From Octopus bimaculoides (lineage: Eukaryota), in assembly GCF_001194135.2 (NCBI RefSeq), contig NC_068984.1, positions 9,451,865 to 9,486,628 of the forward strand: 34,764 nucleotides of DNA. The letters run 5' to 3'. Of this stretch, positions 2,117 to 23,702 are shown one piece after another. The position numbers and the translations under genes are program-made. The notes beneath the pieces are model-generated. The model was given only the letters and a program-made list of their open reading frames with translations. It did not search any database and was not told where the DNA came from. Each line of letters starts with the position of its first letter. The stretch's first letter is position 1.

Positions 2117-2497
2117 GGAGTGGCTGTGTGGTAAGTAGCTTGCTTACCAACCACATGGTCCCGGGTTCAGTCCCATTGCGTGGCATCTTGGGCAAGTGTC
2201 TTCTACTATAGCCTCGGGCCGACCAAAAGCCTTGTGAGTGGATTTGGTAGACGGAAACTGAAAGAAGCCTGTCGTATATATGTATATATATATGTATGTG
2301 TGTATGTGTTTGTATGTCTGTGTTTGTCCCCCCAACATCGTTTGACAACCGATGCTAGTGTGTTTATGTCCCCGTAACTTAGCGGTTCGGCAAAAGAGAC
2401 CGATAGAATAAGTACTAGGCTTCCAAAGAATAAGTCCTCGGGTCGATTTGCTCGACTAAAGGCGGTGCTCCAGCATGGCCACAGTCAAAAGATTGAA
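2117..2497 (+). mobile_element. tRNA-derived SINE, family A, near full length and cut by a gap
   Basis: Head ggagtggctgtgtggtaag...ggttcagtccc, internal (TA/TG)n, tail gactaaaggcggtgctccagcatggcc; many copies in the window. Confidence 0.9.
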
Positions 2498-9085: not shown

Positions 9086-9867
9086 TGTTCAGTAGTTTTA
9101 TTTTTATAACATGCTTTCACTTCACTACCGAGCGCAGCTCTGTGTGCCTTGGGTATGTGCTGTGGTTTGCTGTGATGCTCTTATGGTTACTGTATTGAAA
9201 GTGTTTTGCGTAGGATGTGTGCAGTGCCCAGTAGTGCAATTTTCTGTGTGTTATATATATTTGTAAGTCCTGATGTTTTTGTTACGTATTTGTCTGAATA
9301 TTTTTTTTTATTATACCTAAGGCACCTACTATGATAGGAATTGTTTCTGTTTTTAGATTTCACATTCGAGTTATCTCTATTTCCAGGTCTTTGTATTTTG
9401 AAAGTTTTTCCATTTCTTTTAGAGAAACATTGTCATCTTCTGGTATTGATACATCAATTAGAAATCCTTTTTTTCCTTTCATGATCTCTCACAATTATAT
9501 CTGGCCTATTTGCCTTAATTTCTCTATCTGTGTGTATTGGCATATCCCAGAGTATGGTTGCTTTCTCGTTTTCTGTGACCTTTTCTGGCGTGTGTTTATA
9601 CCATCTTTTTTCTGTTGTTATTCTATAGTGTTGGCATAGCTTCCAGTGTATGTAGGTCCCAGCTCTGTCGAGTCTGTGAATATATTCCTTCTTAGCCAGG
9701 ACTGGGCAGCCAGAGATAATACGGTTTATTGTTTCTTATTCATCGCCACATATTCTGCAGTTACTTGTTATGTTTCTTTCCTAGAGTGGAGTTTTTTCGG
9801 TCTTTCATGTTTTTCAACAAGTTTTAGCATCCAATCGCTGGTTGTTTCAAGGTATTTGGCCATTTCT
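9086..9867 (-). mobile_element. 5'-truncated R4/Dong-like LINE (REL endonuclease C-terminus and 3' UTR) flanked by (TAA)n on both sides
   Basis: Minus-strand translation includes ILWDMPIHTDREIKANRPDIIVRDHE..FLIDVSIPEDDNVSLKEMEKLSKYKDLEIEITRM and QKIALLGTAHILRKTLSIQ*. Confidence 0.9.
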
Positions 9868-10020
<153 letters not shown>

Positions 10021-10599
10021 TTGTTGTTACTGTTGCGGTTTTTGTTGTCGCTGATTTGTCAAGAATTACCTTATCCAACGTATCCTTTTTAAAAACGAAT
10101 GGACGTTATTCCTGAGTATTTTTACTTCTATTTTTAGCGGACTGAGTGACCAACTATATGATTGTATGTTGTTTCTGCAATATTATTCTATAGTAATTTG
10201 ACCCTCTCATGTCTGTCTGAACGTTAACGATGTCAGACATTTTCCCCCGCCATCGATAGCTAAGACTATTTCATATTACACCACTTATTTGCCATAAACT
10301 GTTATCGTAAGCATTGTTTACGACAATATTCGGTCTTATGGGATTACCGGAACTATCAATCATGAAGCGACCATTAATCAAATTCGAAAGAAACACGAAT
10401 TAATTCTGCAAAATACAGGAATTCCGAAGGACAGATAGAAATTGAATCAGCAATAAATATTGTTAGCAACATATTGTAGATACATAATTATATTCTGCGT
10501 TCACACATTATTTTAGCTTTCATGAGCCAAAGCGGGCACCGCAGCGTGGTTGTTTCAACTGCTAGAAATAGCTCCAAGTTAATTTCTCTCAAACAGAAT

Positions 10600-12230: not shown

Positions 12231-12914
12231 NNNNNNNNNNNNNNNNNNNNNNNNNNNNNNNNNNNNNNNNNNNNNNNNNNNNNNNNNNNNNNNNNNNNNN
12301 NNNNNNNNNNNNNNNNNNNNNNNNNNNNNNNNNNNNNNNNNNNNNNNNNNNNNNNNNNNNNNNNNNNNNNNNNNNNNNNNNNNNNNNNNNNNNNNNNNNN
12401 NNNNNNNNNNNNNNNNNNNNNNNNNNNNNNNNNNNNNNNNNNNNNNNNNNNNNNNNNNNNNNNNNNNNNNNNNNNNNNNNNNNNNNNNNNNNNNNNNNNN
12501 NNNNNNNNNNNNNNNNNNNNNNNNNNNNNNNNNNNNNNNNNNNNNNNNNNNNNNNNNNNNNNNNNNNNNNNNNNNNNNNNNNNNNNNNNNNNNNNNNNNN
12601 NNNNNNNNNNNNNNNNNNNNNNNNNNNNNNNNNNNNNNNNNNNNNNNNNNNNNNNNNNNNNNNNNNNNNNNNNNNNNNNNNNNNNNNNNNNNNNNNNNNN
12701 NNNNNNNNNNNNNNNNNNNNNNNNNNNNNNNNNNNNNNNNNNNNNNNNNNNNNNNNNNNNNNNNNNNNNNNNNNNNNNNNNNNNNNNNNNNNNNNNNNNG
12801 CCGAACCGCCGGCACCGCGATGGAAAGGCCGACGTGTCGGCTGCGATACGAGCCACGCGGCCGGTACCGTACCCGTGAGTTTGCGATCGAAAGCGCTGTC
12901 GGCCTTATCCACTT

Positions 12915-13750
12915 TAGTCTAAAAAATTGACCCCAGTACTTATTCTTTTTAAGCCTAGTTCTTATTCTATCGGATCTTTTTTGTCGAACTACTGTTATGG
13001 GGACGTAAATACACCAACATCGGTTGTCAAGCGTTGGTAGGGGAACAAATACAGATACAAATAACAAATGCATACACACATATCCATACATAAATATATA
13101 TACAACGGGCTTCTTTCAGTTTCCGTCTGCCAAATCCACTCACAAGGCTTTGGTCGGCCCAAGGCTGTAGTAGAAGATACTTGGCCAGGTGCCACGCAGT
13201 GGGACCGAATCCGGAACCATGTGGTTGGGAGGCAAGCTTCTTTATTTCATTTTATTGGCCATGACGGCCTTACATAGAAGAAAAGGGGGAAAAAAAGAAA
13301 GAAGCTGCGGGCTGGACAAAGACATAATGGTATGTGTAATGAAAGTGATAACAATGAATAAATGGGGGGAAACAGCAACGCCCGCCGATTGCTTGATCCC
13401 CGAAAACATTGTTCTCATATATGAAGCAACAAGCTTCTTACAAATGTTCATATTGTTCATGATATCTATCACTGAAGCATTTTCGCCTTTCATGCATAAC
13501 ACTCCTCATCACTTGTGTGTCCGATTCCCATCAACGTCCACGCCCTCTCTAGGCACACCTCGAGTGGCGTGTCGGCGTCGCTAGGCACCACGTAAAATAT
13601 TTCACTGAAGTCATATAGCTTCTGCACTGTGTCCCACATTAAGGCCTCCATAGCTATCTGCGATGGCCATTCGGGATCTCGCATGCATGTCATGGTTGCT
13701 CCCTTAGGATATTTTTCTAACTCCTTCTTACCACACAACCACTCTTATAT
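12915..13750 (-). mobile_element. SINE family A interrupted by the 481-bp insert
   Basis: Head 13724-13750, body 12915-13242; matches the 2117 and 25477 copies once the insert is removed. Confidence 0.85.
13243..13723 (-). mobile_element. 481-bp retroposed-type insert inside a SINE: 3' end of an unknown ORF, 3' UTR and AATAAA
   Basis: CTTCTT direct repeats at 13237-13242 and 13724-13729; removing the insert restores the SINE head gagtggttgtgtggt-aagaag-cttgcctcccaaccacatgg; open frame ELEKYP...EECYA* ends at 13490; AATAAA at 13251-13256 on the minus strand. Confidence 0.75.
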
Positions 13751-14253
13751 ATNNNNNNNNNNNNNNNNNNNNNNNNNNNNNNNNNNNNNNNNNNNNNNNN
13801 NNNNNNNNNNNNNNNNNNNNNNNNNNNNNNNNNNNNNNNNNNNNNNNNNNNNNNNNNNNNNNNNNNNNNNNNNNNNNNNNNNNNNNNNNNNNNNNNNNNN
13901 NNNNNNNNNNNNNNNNNNNNNNNNNNNNNNNNNNNNNNNNNNNNNNNNNNNNNNNNNNNNNNNNNNNNNNNNNNNNNNNNNNNNNNNNNNNNNNNNNNNN
14001 NNNNNNNNNNNNNNNNNNNNNNNNNNNNNNNNNNNNNNNNNNNNNNNNNNNNNNNNNNNNNNNNNNNNNNNNNNNNNNNNNNNNNNNNNNNNNNNNNNNN
14101 NNNNNNNNNNNNNNNNNNNNNNNNNNNNNNNNNNNNNNNNNNNNNNNNNNNNNNNNNNNNNNNNNNNNNNNNNNNNNNNNNNNNNNNNNNNNNNNNNNNN
14201 NNNNNNNNNNNNNNNNNNNNNNNNNNNNNNNNNNNNNNNNNNNNNNNNNNNNN

Positions 14254-16259: not shown

Positions 16260-16495
16260 ACGTATCTGTCAAGACCTACCAAAAACTGAGCAAGTATAAA
16301 GATTTTAAAATAGAAATTAGTAAAATGTGGAACCTGAAGACTAAAACAATACTTGTTGTTATAGGTACCCTATGAATGATAGCAAAAGGGGCTGATCGCT
16401 ACCTAGATCAGATACCAGGAAACCCCAAAATGACAGTAATTCAAAACATAGTGCTCATGGGAACTGCCCATATCCTACGTAAAATAATAATAATA
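16260..16495 (+). mobile_element. Short R4/Dong-like 3' fragment
   Basis: KLSKYKDFKIEISKMWNLKTKTILVVIGTL*MIAKG...QNIVLMGTAHILRK, then a short (ATA)n. Confidence 0.8.
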
Positions 16496-16496
16496 A

Positions 16497-17145
16497 TGCA
16501 GAAAGGAGACTTAAAAGGGCGCACTGGGGTATCAGTGTGCAGCGCTCAAGAACAAGCTCTAAGAACAAACTACTCTAAATATCACATCGATAAAAGCACT
16601 GACTCGCCACAGTGTAGGATGTGCTCCGAGAAGAGAGAAAGTATTAGCCATATTGTTAGTGAGTGCTGTAAGCTCGCACAACGCAAATACAAAAGGAGAC
16701 ACGACAATGTGGCCAGATATGTCCACTGGCTGCTGTGCGGTAAAGCAAACCTCGAGAGAGCCAAACAGTGGTATGAACACAAGCCAGAGGGAGTAATGGA
16801 AAACGAACATTACAAAATACTCTGGGATTTTAACATGCAGTGCGACCAAATGATAGAGACCAGATATCTTGCTCGTCCATAAAGATGAAAAAAAGAGTAA
16901 GGATAATAGATGTTGCAATACCAGGCGATTCGAGAGGGAAATGTAAGGAAACAGAAAAGATTGAGAAATACCAGCCACTGCGGAACGAGATAGGAAAGTT
17001 ATGGGGCATCAGGAAAGTAATGGTGATACAGGTGGTAAATGGAGCATTGGGAGCAGTTTCCAAGAGCCTTGAAAAACATATTAAGAATATTGGAGCTGCT
17101 GACAGGCTTGAGGTGATCCCGAAGACAGCATTGTTGGGTACAGCA
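16497..17145 (+). mobile_element. R4/Dong-like fragment of a second subfamily: CCHC zinc knuckle and REL endonuclease
   Basis: CRMCSEKRESISHIVSEC, RRHDNVARYVHW, ILWDF, IIDVAIPGD, EKIEKY, ALLGTA; one frameshift or deletion near 16860. Confidence 0.88.
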
Positions 17146-17325
17146 CTTTCCTCTCGACTCTCAATTTTCTTTTCAAGTTAAACTTGAGGAAGTCAATGAG
17201 AACTCAACCAATGTATTTGTCCTCATGCCTTTCAGCCTTGTCCACCAAACAACCTCTTTCGCCACAGCCTCTAGGCAAAGGAAAACTGCATTGTCTTCCC
17301 GATTGAAGGAGAGTGGCGGTGAACA
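17146..17325 (-). mobile_element. Fragment resembling the C-terminus of an L1/Tx1-type ORF2
   Basis: Minus strand EDNAVFLCLEAVAKEVVWWTRLKG... then frame-shifted LIDFLKFNLKRKLRVERKVL; resembles the K..IW..R motif after the L1/Tx1 zinc finger (recognition only, no search run). Confidence 0.5.
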
Positions 17326-18117: not shown

Positions 18118-18960
<843 letters not shown>

Positions 18961-19572: not shown

Positions 19573-20134
19573 AGACGTAAAGCGGAGGCAGGGAGGGAGA
19601 GAGAGAGATAATTATCCTTGAATTTTCGACTTTATCCACTCTCATTGCCCTCCCTCCGCACATTCTACTCCAGCGGATTAATTCCACGTCGGAAATTAAC
19701 CGCTGACATGAAATGTTATAATAACACCCCCACCACCAACACCACCACCAACGCCATCACCATCGACAGCAGCAGTCAGCTGCCAGCCATAGGCTGAAAC
19801 ACTGGATATTAAAATCTAATACAGCAGCAATGGCAGTGGTAACAACAGCAACAACAGCAGCAGCATTAATAATAGCATAAGGAACTGATTGGAGAAGAAA
19901 TGATAATAACCTGTGGACAGTAATGAGGTAAAAAGATTTTCATTTAATCCGACAAATAAAACAAAAAAAATAATAACAACACATTATAAAATATTAATGG
20001 CGTTCAGAGTTGTTTTTGTTTTTTGCATTTTCGTTTGGTTTTTTTTTTGTTTTTTTTGTTTCGTTTTGTCTTGATGGGGGTTTTTTTCTCGGACAAATTG
20101 GATCACAGACGCACAGACACAAACAGGTATATAT

Positions 20135-20173
<39 letters not shown>

Positions 20174-20709
20174 CGCACACAAATGGGTATATATACACAC
20201 ACATACAGAGACAGAGGAATACATACACAGAGGTATACACACACGCACGCACAAATACATATAGATACACACACACGCAAGTAGGTATATATAAACACGC
20301 ATACACTCAAAGAGGAATAGATACACACAGATATACATATAGACATACATATACACATACATGCATGCATGCATACATACATATATATATATATATATAC
20401 ACACACACAAAACTAACGGGCGAACAGGAACTTGTAGATATTCAGTCAAATACACACACTCGAACAGACATAGCAGAGACAAACGGACAGACAGATATGG
20501 TGAGAAAGACAGACAGACAGACGGGCAGACAGACAGACAGACAGACAGGCAGGCAGGCAGGCAGGCAGACTGACGGGCAGGCAGACTGACGGGCAGGCAG
20601 ACAGACAGAGGGATTGAACGATAGACAGACCAGGAGACAAGTAGGTATGTGTGGATGAACACACACACACACACACGCATATGCAAACACACAAACAAAG
20701 ACGTACACA

Positions 20710-21085
20710 CACACACAAATTTAGACAGCCTCTCACACACACACATACACACACACAAATGCAGACAGTTTCACACACACACATATACACACACAAATGC
20801 AGACAGACTCACACACACAAACATACACACACACAAATGCAGACAGTCTCACATACACACGCACATACACACACAAATTCATACAATCTCACACACACAC
20901 ACATACACACACACAAATGCAGACAGACTCATACACACACACAAATGCAGACAGACTCACACACACACATACACACACAATCTCACACACACATACACAC
21001 ACACACTAATTGCAGACAGACTCTCACACACACACACACACACACACATACACTCACACAAATGCAGACAGACTTGCACGCACAC
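20710..21085 (+). repeat. About 40-bp CA-based minisatellite with core ACAAATGCAGACAGACTC
   Basis: About 9 units, mostly 40-nt spacing. Confidence 0.85.
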
Positions 21086-21179
21086 ACACAAGATTCAGCA
21101 TGACACAATGCGACAAGGATGGCCCTTTGTATTACAGGTTCTACTCATTTTTGCCACTTTGTTATACTGAAAAACCGTA

Positions 21180-23045: not shown

Positions 23046-23539
23046 AAACAAGAATATTATTGACAGCGACATCGAAGTTTCTGGCAGTTAAGCTATCGTC
23101 GGACTGCAAAAATATTCTTATTTAAGAATAGAAAATTCATACGCTACAGAAGTATAGAATAACTCATAAGATTAATGTAATATCGTAACAACATATTAAT
23201 ACCGCCAGAGGCAGCATTAATGCCGAGGTGGACATAAATATTGCCTCTAATGCAAAATTTTTATTATAACGTAATATAAACACACACACACACACATACA
23301 ATTATAACATACATATATGCCTATATATATATATATATACGTATGTACACAAATACTCACACAAACACATATATCTATATACATACGCACATTTATACAT
23401 ACATGACTGCGTATGGATACACATTTTAAATTCAAATCTTATGCATGTTGTGAGTTAGGTTAAAATGTCTCATCGTGAAGTTACCGTCTCTGAGGACGAC
23501 AAGGTTTCACTCCCATATCTCGTCTCGACATCTTCATCC

Positions 23540-23702
23540 CTACTACAACAACAACAACTACTACTACTACTACTACCGCCACCACCACCACCACTACCAC
23601 CACCACAGTCACTACTACCACCACCACAACCACTACTACCACCATCACAATCACCACCATCACCAACACCACCATCACCTTTACCGCCACCACCACCACC
23701 AC
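23540..23702. repeat. (CAA/TAC/CAC)n trinucleotide tract running into a gap
   Basis: Direct reading. Confidence 0.95.

What the first reader, a model, noticed from the sequence alone, without database searches (positions are those of the whole stretch)
13243..13723. Orphan coding 3' end retro-inserted into a SINE with a clean 6-bp TSD
Seen: a family A SINE is split by 481 bp flanked by CTTCTT repeats. The minus strand has 77 open codons (ELEKYPKGATMTCMRDPEWPSQIAMEALMWDTVQKLYDFSEIFYVVPSDADTPLEVCLERAWTLMGIGHTSDEECYA*), a 247-nt UTR and AATAAA near the end. There are no TG..CA ends and no TIRs. The ORF is more GC/CpG-rich than its surroundings and matches none of the LINE C-termini in this window. 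Inference: target-primed capture of an mRNA 3' end. DADTPLEVCLERA loosely recalls P-loop nucleotide-kinase segments, so a viral or host kinase transcript, or an undescribed retroelement, are candidates. The intact frame and its position inside a SINE suggest a young event.
Basis: partly seen in the sequence, partly recalled or inferred. Interest (0 to 1): 0.72.

Follow-up and report, generated by a model that had tools for sequence, protein, structure and literature searches.

The report
Two small insertions in octopus SINE
A common octopus repeat is interrupted by 481 bases that are really two unrelated short pieces inserted at almost the same spot, and the supposed gene fragment in one piece is no longer than chance would give, so the locus looks ordinary.

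Summary
The physical observation holds. A SINE on the minus strand is interrupted at 13243-13723, and CTTCTT lies on both sides where uninterrupted copies have it once. The 77-codon open frame, its stop and an AATAAA are there, and there are no TIRs or TG..CA ends. The interpretation does not hold up.

1. An open frame of 77 codons or more appears in 47% of dinucleotide shuffles of the insert, and in 38.5% for piece B alone.
2. The peptide has no credible relative in Pfam, NCBIfam, PHROGs, PDB, 5.8 billion protein clusters, 1.84 billion representatives, viral, prokaryotic or metagenome contigs. It has no P-loop. Its AlphaFold model scores pLDDT 47.
3. The insert is composite. At 13430-13441 it carries CAAGCTTCTTAC, the SINE's own sequence across the insertion point (3 of 20,000 shuffles).

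The locus therefore reads as piece A (187 bp, 10-bp TSD) plus piece B (282 bp, 8-bp TSD), inserted at overlapping cuts in the loop of the SINE's hairpin. The ORF is in B and the AATAAA is in A, so they are not one captured transcript.

The most likely reading is two 5'-truncated retroposed fragments of unidentified, low-copy origin. One compound repair event is the main rival. Genome-wide copy number could not be tested. Interest is low.

The parts
12912..13242 (-). Host SINE, the part left of the insertion (the 3' part in the SINE's own sense)
   Evidence: 78-86% identity to the copies at 2133-2461, 25496-25829 and 26593-26903 and to copies in O. vulgaris locus L003.
13233..13242 (.).
   Evidence: the repeat finder family D4, 100% identical to 13430-13439; junctions printed.
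13243..13429 (.). Piece A, 187 bp, 40.6% GC, orientation unknown, unique in the window. The right border is ambiguous by 3 nt (CAA microhomology).
   Evidence: No TIRs. No Rfam or Pfam hit.
13251..13256 (-). AATAAA hexamer, minus strand, inside piece A
   Evidence: Read directly. A second AATAAA overlaps the A/TSD border, and a third lies on the + strand at 13358-13363.
13430..13441 (.). Internal 12-nt copy of the SINE sequence across the insertion point (CAAGCTTCTTAC). It serves as the second copy of A's TSD (13430-13439) and the first copy of B's TSD (13434-13441).
   Evidence: An in-register match of this size occurred in 3 of 20,000 dinucleotide shuffles. The same 12-mer occurs in uninterrupted O. 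vulgaris copies.
13442..13723 (.). Piece B, 282 bp, 46.8% GC, unique in the window. It carries the 77-codon open frame on the minus strand.
13490..13723 (-). 77-codon open frame plus TGA stop, open from the border of piece B. Probably a chance ORF.
   Evidence: Chance level. No homologues. pLDDT 46.8.
13724..13731 (.).
13724..13752 (-). Host SINE, the part right of the insertion (the 5' part in the SINE's sense), cut off by the assembly gap that starts at 13753
   Evidence: 90% identity to 2110-2138; gap map.
13221..13236 (.). Left arm of the SINE's own imperfect inverted repeat. Its partner is 13727-13742. The insertions sit between the arms.
   Evidence: the repeat finder I2, 16 nt, 81% complementary. 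Uninterrupted copies fold as a hairpin with a 7-nt loop, z = -2.7 and -2.2.

Best explanation
The 481 bp are not one insert. They are two unrelated short pieces, A (13243-13429, 187 bp) and B (13442-13723, 282 bp), separated by 12 nt of the SINE's own sequence. Each piece is bracketed by its own target-site duplication: CAAGCTTCTT for A and CTTCTTAC for B. Two successive insertions at overlapping staggered cuts, in either order, reproduce the observed sequence exactly. Both cuts lie in the loop and 3' arm of a hairpin-forming inverted repeat of the SINE. The most likely mechanism (inferred, not shown) is target-primed reverse transcription by a resident octopus LINE, giving 5'-truncated copies of low-copy or unrecognised RNAs or repeats. 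The 77-codon frame in B is most likely a chance open frame, or at best an unverifiable remnant. The AATAAA lies in A and has nothing to do with it.
For: Composite structure:
- The 12-mer at 13430-13441 equals the uninterrupted SINE sequence across the site and is in register. This occurred in 3 of 20,000 shuffles; any 12-nt match to the site occurred in 0.27% of 3,000 shuffles.
- The same 12-mer is present in natural uninterrupted copies.
- The 10-bp repeat was found independently by the repeat finder (D4).

Insertion type:
- TSDs of 8 and 10 bp, no TIRs and no TG..CA ends.
- The cuts lie between the arms of the hairpin, in its loop and 3' arm.

Chance ORF:
- 47% and 38.5% of shuffles reach 77 codons.
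- Two open frames that are as long or longer (113 and 87 codons) cross the A/B junction and so cannot be ancestral genes.
- There is no homologue anywhere, although the database contains O. vulgaris annotated proteins and eukaryotic transposon ORFs.
- pLDDT is 46.8.

Background: octopus genomes carry RTE and Dong LINEs with complete ORFs and signs of recent activity (PMC9115989).
Against: - Two independent hits within 2 bp of each other need a hot spot. None is demonstrated: the seven other SINE copies examined are uninterrupted at this site.
- Neither piece ends in poly(A) or a clear simple-repeat tail.
- Neither piece resembles the LINE fragments in the window.
- Neither piece recurs in 29.7 kb of window sequence or in 20 kb of O. 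vulgaris, so a transposon origin is not shown.
- Orientation could not be determined for either piece.
- The minus strand of the whole insert can be read with one change of frame, which only 2.2% of shuffles allow. This oddity is left unexplained.
Confidence: 0.5

Rival explanations
1. One compound event: a break in the SINE hairpin was repaired by end joining that captured two unrelated DNA or cDNA fragments. Between them it laid down a short templated copy of the flank (polymerase-theta-type templated insertion).
For: - This removes the need for two independent hits 2 bp apart.
- An internal copy of flanking sequence between filler pieces is a typical signature of templated end joining (established knowledge).
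- A hairpin or cruciform-prone site is a plausible break point.
- Unique, non-repetitive filler fits the lack of other copies.
Against: - The three partial copies of the target have exactly the boundaries that two ordinary TSDs would give. A repair event need not produce such clean nesting.
- Templated insertions are usually copied imperfectly or from either strand.
- Nothing here tests the mechanism directly.
Confidence: 0.2
2. One reading: a single target-primed capture of the 3' end of one mRNA (77 C-terminal codons, 247-nt UTR, AATAAA) with a 6-bp TSD.
For: - The frame is open from the border and ends in a stop, AATAAA lies 8 nt from the minus-strand end, and CTTCTT flanks both sides.
- The cut site TTCTT/AC is T-rich then purine-pyrimidine, loosely like L1-type nick sites (inference).
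Against: - The internal 12-nt SINE target copy would be an unexplained coincidence (p about 1.5e-4).
- There is no poly(A) tail.
- The ORF length is at chance level.
- No parent protein turned up among 1.84 billion representatives or 5.8 billion clusters, which include annotated O. vulgaris proteins.
- There is no kinase motif or family hit.
Confidence: 0.07
3. Assembly or gap-closing artefact: the arrangement does not exist on one DNA molecule.
For: The locus lies on a 953-bp island between gaps of 569 and 501 N, in a window with ten gaps. Repeats such as this SINE are where short-read assemblies fail.
Against: The shared sequence at the joins is only 6-12 nt, too short to mislead k-mer assemblers (inference). 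The nested TSD structure is biologically coherent.
Confidence: 0.08
4. Non-autonomous cut-and-paste DNA transposons: B of the hAT type (8-bp TSD) and A of the Mutator type (9-11-bp TSD).
For: The TSD lengths of 8 and 10 bp match those superfamilies (established knowledge).
Against: No terminal inverted repeats at the ends of A, B or the whole insert. No other copy in the window or in L003.
Confidence: 0.04

Closest known systems
5'-truncated non-LTR (LINE) retrotransposon insertions nested in SINEs, made by target-primed reverse transcription
   Same: Short length, target-site duplications of variable length (8 and 10 bp), no TIRs or LTR-type ends, and microhomology (CAA) at one junction. The host genome is rich in LINE and SINE copies, and octopus RTE and Dong LINEs are reported as possibly active (PMC9115989).
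   Different: There is no poly(A) or simple-repeat 3' tail, no reverse-transcriptase or known LINE C-terminal similarity, no second copy seen, and the orientation is undetermined.
Processed retrocopy (retropseudogene) of a cellular mRNA
   Same: TSD, an open frame running in from the 5' border, and AATAAA near one end.
   Different: There is no poly(A) tail and no parent protein was found. The ORF and the AATAAA are separated by a copy of the target site, so they belong to different pieces.
Filler DNA or templated insertions at repaired double-strand breaks (alternative end joining)
   Same: Two unrelated unique fragments with a short copy of flanking sequence between them, at a hairpin-prone site.
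   Different: The duplicated flank copies have the clean, nested boundaries of ordinary TSDs.
Octopus tRNA-derived SINE family (the host element)
   Same: High copy density: at least 4 copies in 30 kb of window and at least 4 in 20 kb of O. vulgaris. Copies are 74-86% identical. An internal hairpin with a 7-nt loop resembles an anticodon arm.
   Different: ARAGORN and Rfam do not call a tRNA in any copy. The tRNA origin rests on my own recollection of cephalopod SINE literature, not on a test here.

Membership tests
Processed mRNA retrocopy | Poly(A) tail at the 3' end, just inside the TSD | tested here: not met
   The minus-strand end reads ..AATAAAATGAAATA and is followed directly by the TSD. 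No A-run lies at any of the four piece ends.
Processed mRNA retrocopy | An identifiable parent gene or protein | tested here: not met
   There was no hit in 5.8 billion clusters. The only hit among 1.84 billion representatives is a bacterial SH3b repeat protein at E = 5e-4, which is a chance match multiplied by three repeats. The database includes annotated O. vulgaris proteins.
Processed mRNA retrocopy | Coding end, UTR and polyadenylation signal contiguous in one insert with one TSD | tested here: not met
   A 12-nt target copy at 13430-13441 splits the insert into two pieces, each with its own TSD.
Non-LTR retrotransposon, 5'-truncated copy | Target-site duplication of variable length, with no TIRs or LTRs | tested here: met
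   TSDs of 10 bp and 8 bp; no terminal inverted repeats.
Non-LTR retrotransposon, 5'-truncated copy | A 3' end shared with other copies (poly(A) or simple-repeat tail) and multi-copy status | tested here: inconclusive
   There is no second copy in 29.7 kb of window or 20 kb of O. vulgaris, and no clear tail. A whole-genome search is not possible with these tools.
Non-LTR retrotransposon, 5'-truncated copy | Similarity of the ORF to LINE ORF2, its C-terminus or ORF1 | tested here: not met
   No Pfam hit. tblastn against the window's LINE fragments gave E > 5. A control LINE ORF from the window found 161 relatives in the same database.
Cut-and-paste DNA transposon (hAT or Mutator type) | Terminal inverted repeats | tested here: not met
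   The repeat finder with seed 6 found no pair joining the termini of A, B or the whole insert.
LTR retrotransposon or solo LTR | TG..CA termini with a 4-6-bp TSD | tested here: not met
   The insert ends read TATTTC.. and ..AACTC.
P-loop nucleoside/nucleotide kinase | Walker A motif GxxxxGK[ST] and a family profile match | tested here: not met
   The 77 residues contain no such motif. No Pfam, NCBIfam or PDB sequence match. The AlphaFold model is too poor (pLDDT 46.8) for a fold search.
Bacterial SH3b domain | Match to the SH3_3 profile | tested here: not met
   The peptide has no SH3_3 hit at E <= 10. The best single pairwise segment to P0001 scores 32 bits, far below significance for the whole library.
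SINE (host repeat) | Short, interspersed, many diverged copies | tested here: met
SINE (host repeat) | Head derived from a tRNA or other pol III gene | tested here: inconclusive
   No ARAGORN or Rfam call. A hairpin with a 7-nt loop and a B-box-like GGTTCAGTCCC, read on the complement of copy 2, are suggestive only.

The most novel reading that the evidence does not exclude
The loop of the octopus SINE's anticodon-like hairpin is a recurrent landing site for an uncharacterised insertion process that duplicates the target, leaves no TIRs and adds no poly(A). Piece B would then be the 3' end of an undescribed, octopus-restricted retroelement whose C-terminal 77 residues are a true orphan protein tail.
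Probability: 0.08. Interest if true: 0.45.

Novelty: new member of a known kind. Interest (0 to 1): 0.13.

Why it matters
It matters little as it stands. Nested small insertions in SINEs are routine in repeat-rich cephalopod genomes, and the claimed orphan coding sequence is not distinguishable from a chance open frame.

Two points are useful. First, 70-110-codon open frames arise freely in this sequence, so an intact frame is not evidence of coding or of youth. Second, a 'clean short TSD' can hide a composite insertion.

If a genome-wide survey showed many SINE copies hit at the same hairpin loop, that would point to structure- or sequence-directed target choice by an octopus retroelement, which would be of moderate interest.

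Tried and rejected
**Kinase or viral protein.** The 77-aa peptide gave nothing in Pfam, NCBIfam, PHROGs or PDB sequence searches, nothing in IMG/VR by protein and by two 21-mers, and nothing by blastn against phages and plasmids.

**Microbial origin.** GTDB genomes and JGI metagenomes gave no relative.

**SH3b lead.** The single phmmer hit, P0001 (E = 5e-4), is a protein with three SH3b repeats. Its score is the sum of three weak matches to the same short PEWPS-centred segment, and the best single segment scores 32 bits. I rejected it as a chance match.

**Exact look-up.** Seven ORF variants from the insert are not in the 15-billion-protein collection, so no other contig carrying the insert could be fetched.

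**A longer frameshifted gene.** The minus strand needs only one frame change to be read end to end, which 2.2% of shuffles allow. The second frame crosses the A/SINE/B junctions and has no family hit, so I did not treat it as a gene.

**Structure.** The single-sequence AlphaFold2 model has mean pLDDT 46.8, so I ran no fold search.

**RNA gene.** Rfam gave only a sub-threshold snoRNA hit (18.9 bits against a gathering score of 45).

**Cloning-site contamination.** A palindrome of the GGCCNNNNNGGCC type at 13257-13269 suggested it, but the flanks look like no vector and the plasmid search was empty.

**Database control.** A LINE ORF from the window found 161 relatives. The best were only 70% identical and lay on ENA contigs that lack the octopus SINE. 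The database therefore holds eukaryotic transposon ORFs but apparently not the unannotated ORFs of this genome. This limits what the negative result says about octopus-specific repeats.

Full report
**Setting**

The window is a gap-rich draft eukaryotic assembly with ten runs of N, 29,739 called bases and 38% GC. The finding sits on a 953-bp island (12800-13752) between gaps of 569 and 501 N.

An ORF that lies within a copy of the repeat in question (window 2147-2455, minus strand) has one relative among 5.8 billion protein clusters. That relative is a 'hypothetical predicted protein' of Octopus vulgaris, at 59% identity over 98% of the query. The 20-kb O. vulgaris locus around that gene (L003, GCA_951406725.2) holds at least four copies of the same repeat at 74-86% identity. 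The host is therefore an octopus or a close relative, and the repeat is a high-density short interspersed element.

ARAGORN and Rfam call no tRNA in any copy. Its tRNA ancestry is therefore my recollection of the cephalopod SINE literature, not a result obtained here.

**Checking the observation**

- The sequence at about 12912-13242 and at 13724-13752 matches the copies at 2110-2461, 25496-25829 and 26593-26903 at 78-86% identity.
- In an alignment, the uninterrupted copies carry CT(T/A)CTT once at the point where the split copy has CTTCTT twice, at 13237-13242 and 13724-13729, with 481 bp between.
- Four O. vulgaris copies are also uninterrupted there, and two read exactly CAAGCTTCTTACC.
- The minus-strand frame is open for 77 codons from the border at 13723 to 13493, with TGA at 13492-13490.
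- AATAAA lies on the minus strand at 13256-13251.
- No inverted repeat joins the insert termini, and the ends are not TG..CA.
- The ORF region is 50% GC against 38% for the window. Its CpG ratio (0.86) is the same as the window's (0.83) and lower than the left flank's (1.15).

The physical description is right. The CpG claim is not.

**Is the ORF more than chance?**

It is not.

- In 2,000 dinucleotide-preserving shuffles of the 481 bp, 47% had an open frame of at least 77 codons.
- For the 282-bp piece that actually carries the ORF, the figure is 38.5%.
- The insert also has a 113-codon open frame on the + strand (136 codons if run into the SINE) and an 87-codon one in another minus-strand frame.
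- Three such frames together are unusual (0.7% of shuffles). The minus strand can be read end to end with one change of frame (2.2% of shuffles). However, total stop-triplet content is normal, 45 against 47.6 ± 4.7.
- As shown below, the two longer frames cross junctions between unrelated pieces, so they cannot be inherited genes. They show how easily long open frames arise here.

**Is the peptide related to anything?**

- Pfam gave only a sub-threshold DUF3592 hit (E = 0.067, 14.3 bits against a cut-off of 25.3).
- NCBIfam and PHROGs gave nothing.
- PDB sequences gave only E = 1.2 to a designed repeat protein.
- The indexed search of 5.8 billion clusters found no candidate.
- The exhaustive phmmer search of 1.84 billion representatives found one protein, P0001, at E = 5e-4. 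P0001 is a bacterial protein with three SH3b repeats. Its score is the sum of three weak alignments of the same PEWPS-centred segment, and the best single segment scores 32 bits, which would not be significant alone in a library of that size. The peptide itself does not match SH3_3. I treat this as a chance match multiplied by the repeats.
- There is no relative in IMG/VR, GTDB genomes or JGI metagenomes. There is no DNA match in phages, plasmids or viral contigs.
- There is no Walker A motif, so the kinase recollection fails.
- The single-sequence AlphaFold2 model has mean pLDDT 46.8, too low to justify a fold search.

As a control, a LINE ORF from the same window (16376-16879) found 161 relatives. 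The best were only 70% identical and lay on ENA contigs that lack the octopus SINE. Together, this means the databases hold annotated octopus proteins and many eukaryotic transposon ORFs, but probably not the unannotated ORFs of this genome. A conserved host gene or a widespread transposon protein is thus disfavoured. An octopus-specific, unannotated element is not excluded.

**The insert is composite**

The repeat finder reported that CAAGCTTCTT at the left junction (13233-13242) recurs exactly at 13430-13439, inside the insert (D4). Read in context, 13430-13441 is CAAGCTTCTTAC. It is the uninterrupted SINE sequence across the insertion point, as it occurs in natural copies.

An in-register match of this extent occurred in 3 of 20,000 dinucleotide shuffles of the insert. 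Any exact 12-mer shared with the site occurred in 0.27% of 3,000 shuffles.

The simplest account is two insertions:
- Piece A (13243-13429, 187 bp) is bracketed by the 10-bp repeat CAAGCTTCTT.
- Piece B (13442-13723, 282 bp) is bracketed by the 8-bp repeat CTTCTTAC (13434-13441 and 13724-13731).
- Either order of events reproduces the observed sequence exactly.
- A's right border is ambiguous by 3 nt (CAA microhomology).

The consequences are:
- The ORF and 51 nt after it belong to B, while the AATAAA belongs to A.
- The '247-nt UTR' is B-tail + SINE + A.
- The 6-bp TSD is simply the overlap of two longer TSDs.

A and B are each unique in the window and absent from the 20-kb O. vulgaris locus. 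Neither has TIRs, a poly(A) run or a clear simple-repeat tail at any end.

**Where the insertions landed**

The insertions lie between the arms of a 16-nt, 81% complementary inverted repeat of the SINE (13221-13236 and 13727-13742, I2). Uninterrupted copies in the window fold as a hairpin with a 7-nt loop (CAAGCTA), with z = -2.7 and -2.2 against shuffles. Both TSDs lie in the loop and the first bases of the 3' arm. This offers a reason, inferred only, why the same spot might be cut twice or might break.

**Mechanism**

Shown:
- Target duplication of 10 and 8 bp.
- No TIRs or LTR-type ends.
- Two unrelated pieces.
- A position in a hairpin loop.

Inferred: each piece was inserted by target-primed reverse transcription by a resident LINE, as a 5'-truncated copy. 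RTE and Dong elements with complete ORFs and signs of recent insertion are reported in octopus (PMC9115989).

The main rival is a single compound repair of a break at the hairpin, capturing two fragments with a templated copy of the flank between them. It removes the need for a double hit but does not predict such clean nested TSDs.

Misassembly cannot be excluded on a 953-bp island between gaps, although the shared sequences at the joins (6-12 nt) are too short to mislead an assembler.

**Novelty and verdict**

The insertion is real and its fine structure is more interesting than first described. Even so, it is an ordinary kind of event in a repeat-rich genome. The 'orphan coding 3' end' is not supported: the frame is at chance length, it has no relatives, and it is not joined to the AATAAA-bearing sequence. 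Whether A and B belong to catalogued octopus repeats could not be tested, because no octopus genome can be searched by DNA with these tools. That search, the state of the orthologous locus, and read support for the junctions are the decisive descriptive checks.

Noticed in passing
window 12800-12911: A GC- and CpG-rich stretch next to the gap continues from the SINE tail but is not shared with the other SINE copies in the window or in L003. CpG observed/expected for 12800-13242 is 1.15, against 0.83 for the window.
   Followed up: partly
window 13257-13269: GGCCATGACGGCC, a palindrome of the GGCCNNNNNGGCC type, lies inside piece A. The flanks resemble no vector and the plasmid search was empty, so it is probably chance.
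   Followed up: partly
window 16376-17178 (+) and 32232-32842 (+): These are LINE fragments. The ORF at 16376-16879 has 161 relatives (best 70% identity) on large ENA contigs of an unidentified eukaryote that lacks the octopus SINE. Window 32676-32830 is 71% identical to DNA overlapping a called gene with a reverse-transcriptase (RVT_1) hit in L001.
   Followed up: partly
P0122 / L003 10001-10387: An O. vulgaris 'hypothetical predicted protein' (named 'Secreted protein' in UniRef) is 59% identical to an ORF that lies within a SINE copy in the window, and its own gene lies on a SINE copy in L003. This is very likely an annotation artefact in the public gene set.
   Followed up: partly
window 13299-13306: AAGAAGCT inside piece A is the reverse complement of 8 nt of the target site (I15). 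It lies in an A/G-rich tract, so it is probably chance, but it could bear on a compound-event model.
   Followed up: no
L002 8191-9979: Five evenly spaced 106-residue called genes at a 367-bp period form a tandem repeat array, just upstream of the LINE-like ORF on the ENA contig.
   Followed up: no
window 9850-10050, 18150-18330, 20000-21100, 23480-23700: Long microsatellite and low-complexity tracts give spurious ORFs of 100-250 codons. This is a further reminder that ORF length alone means little in this window.
   Followed up: no
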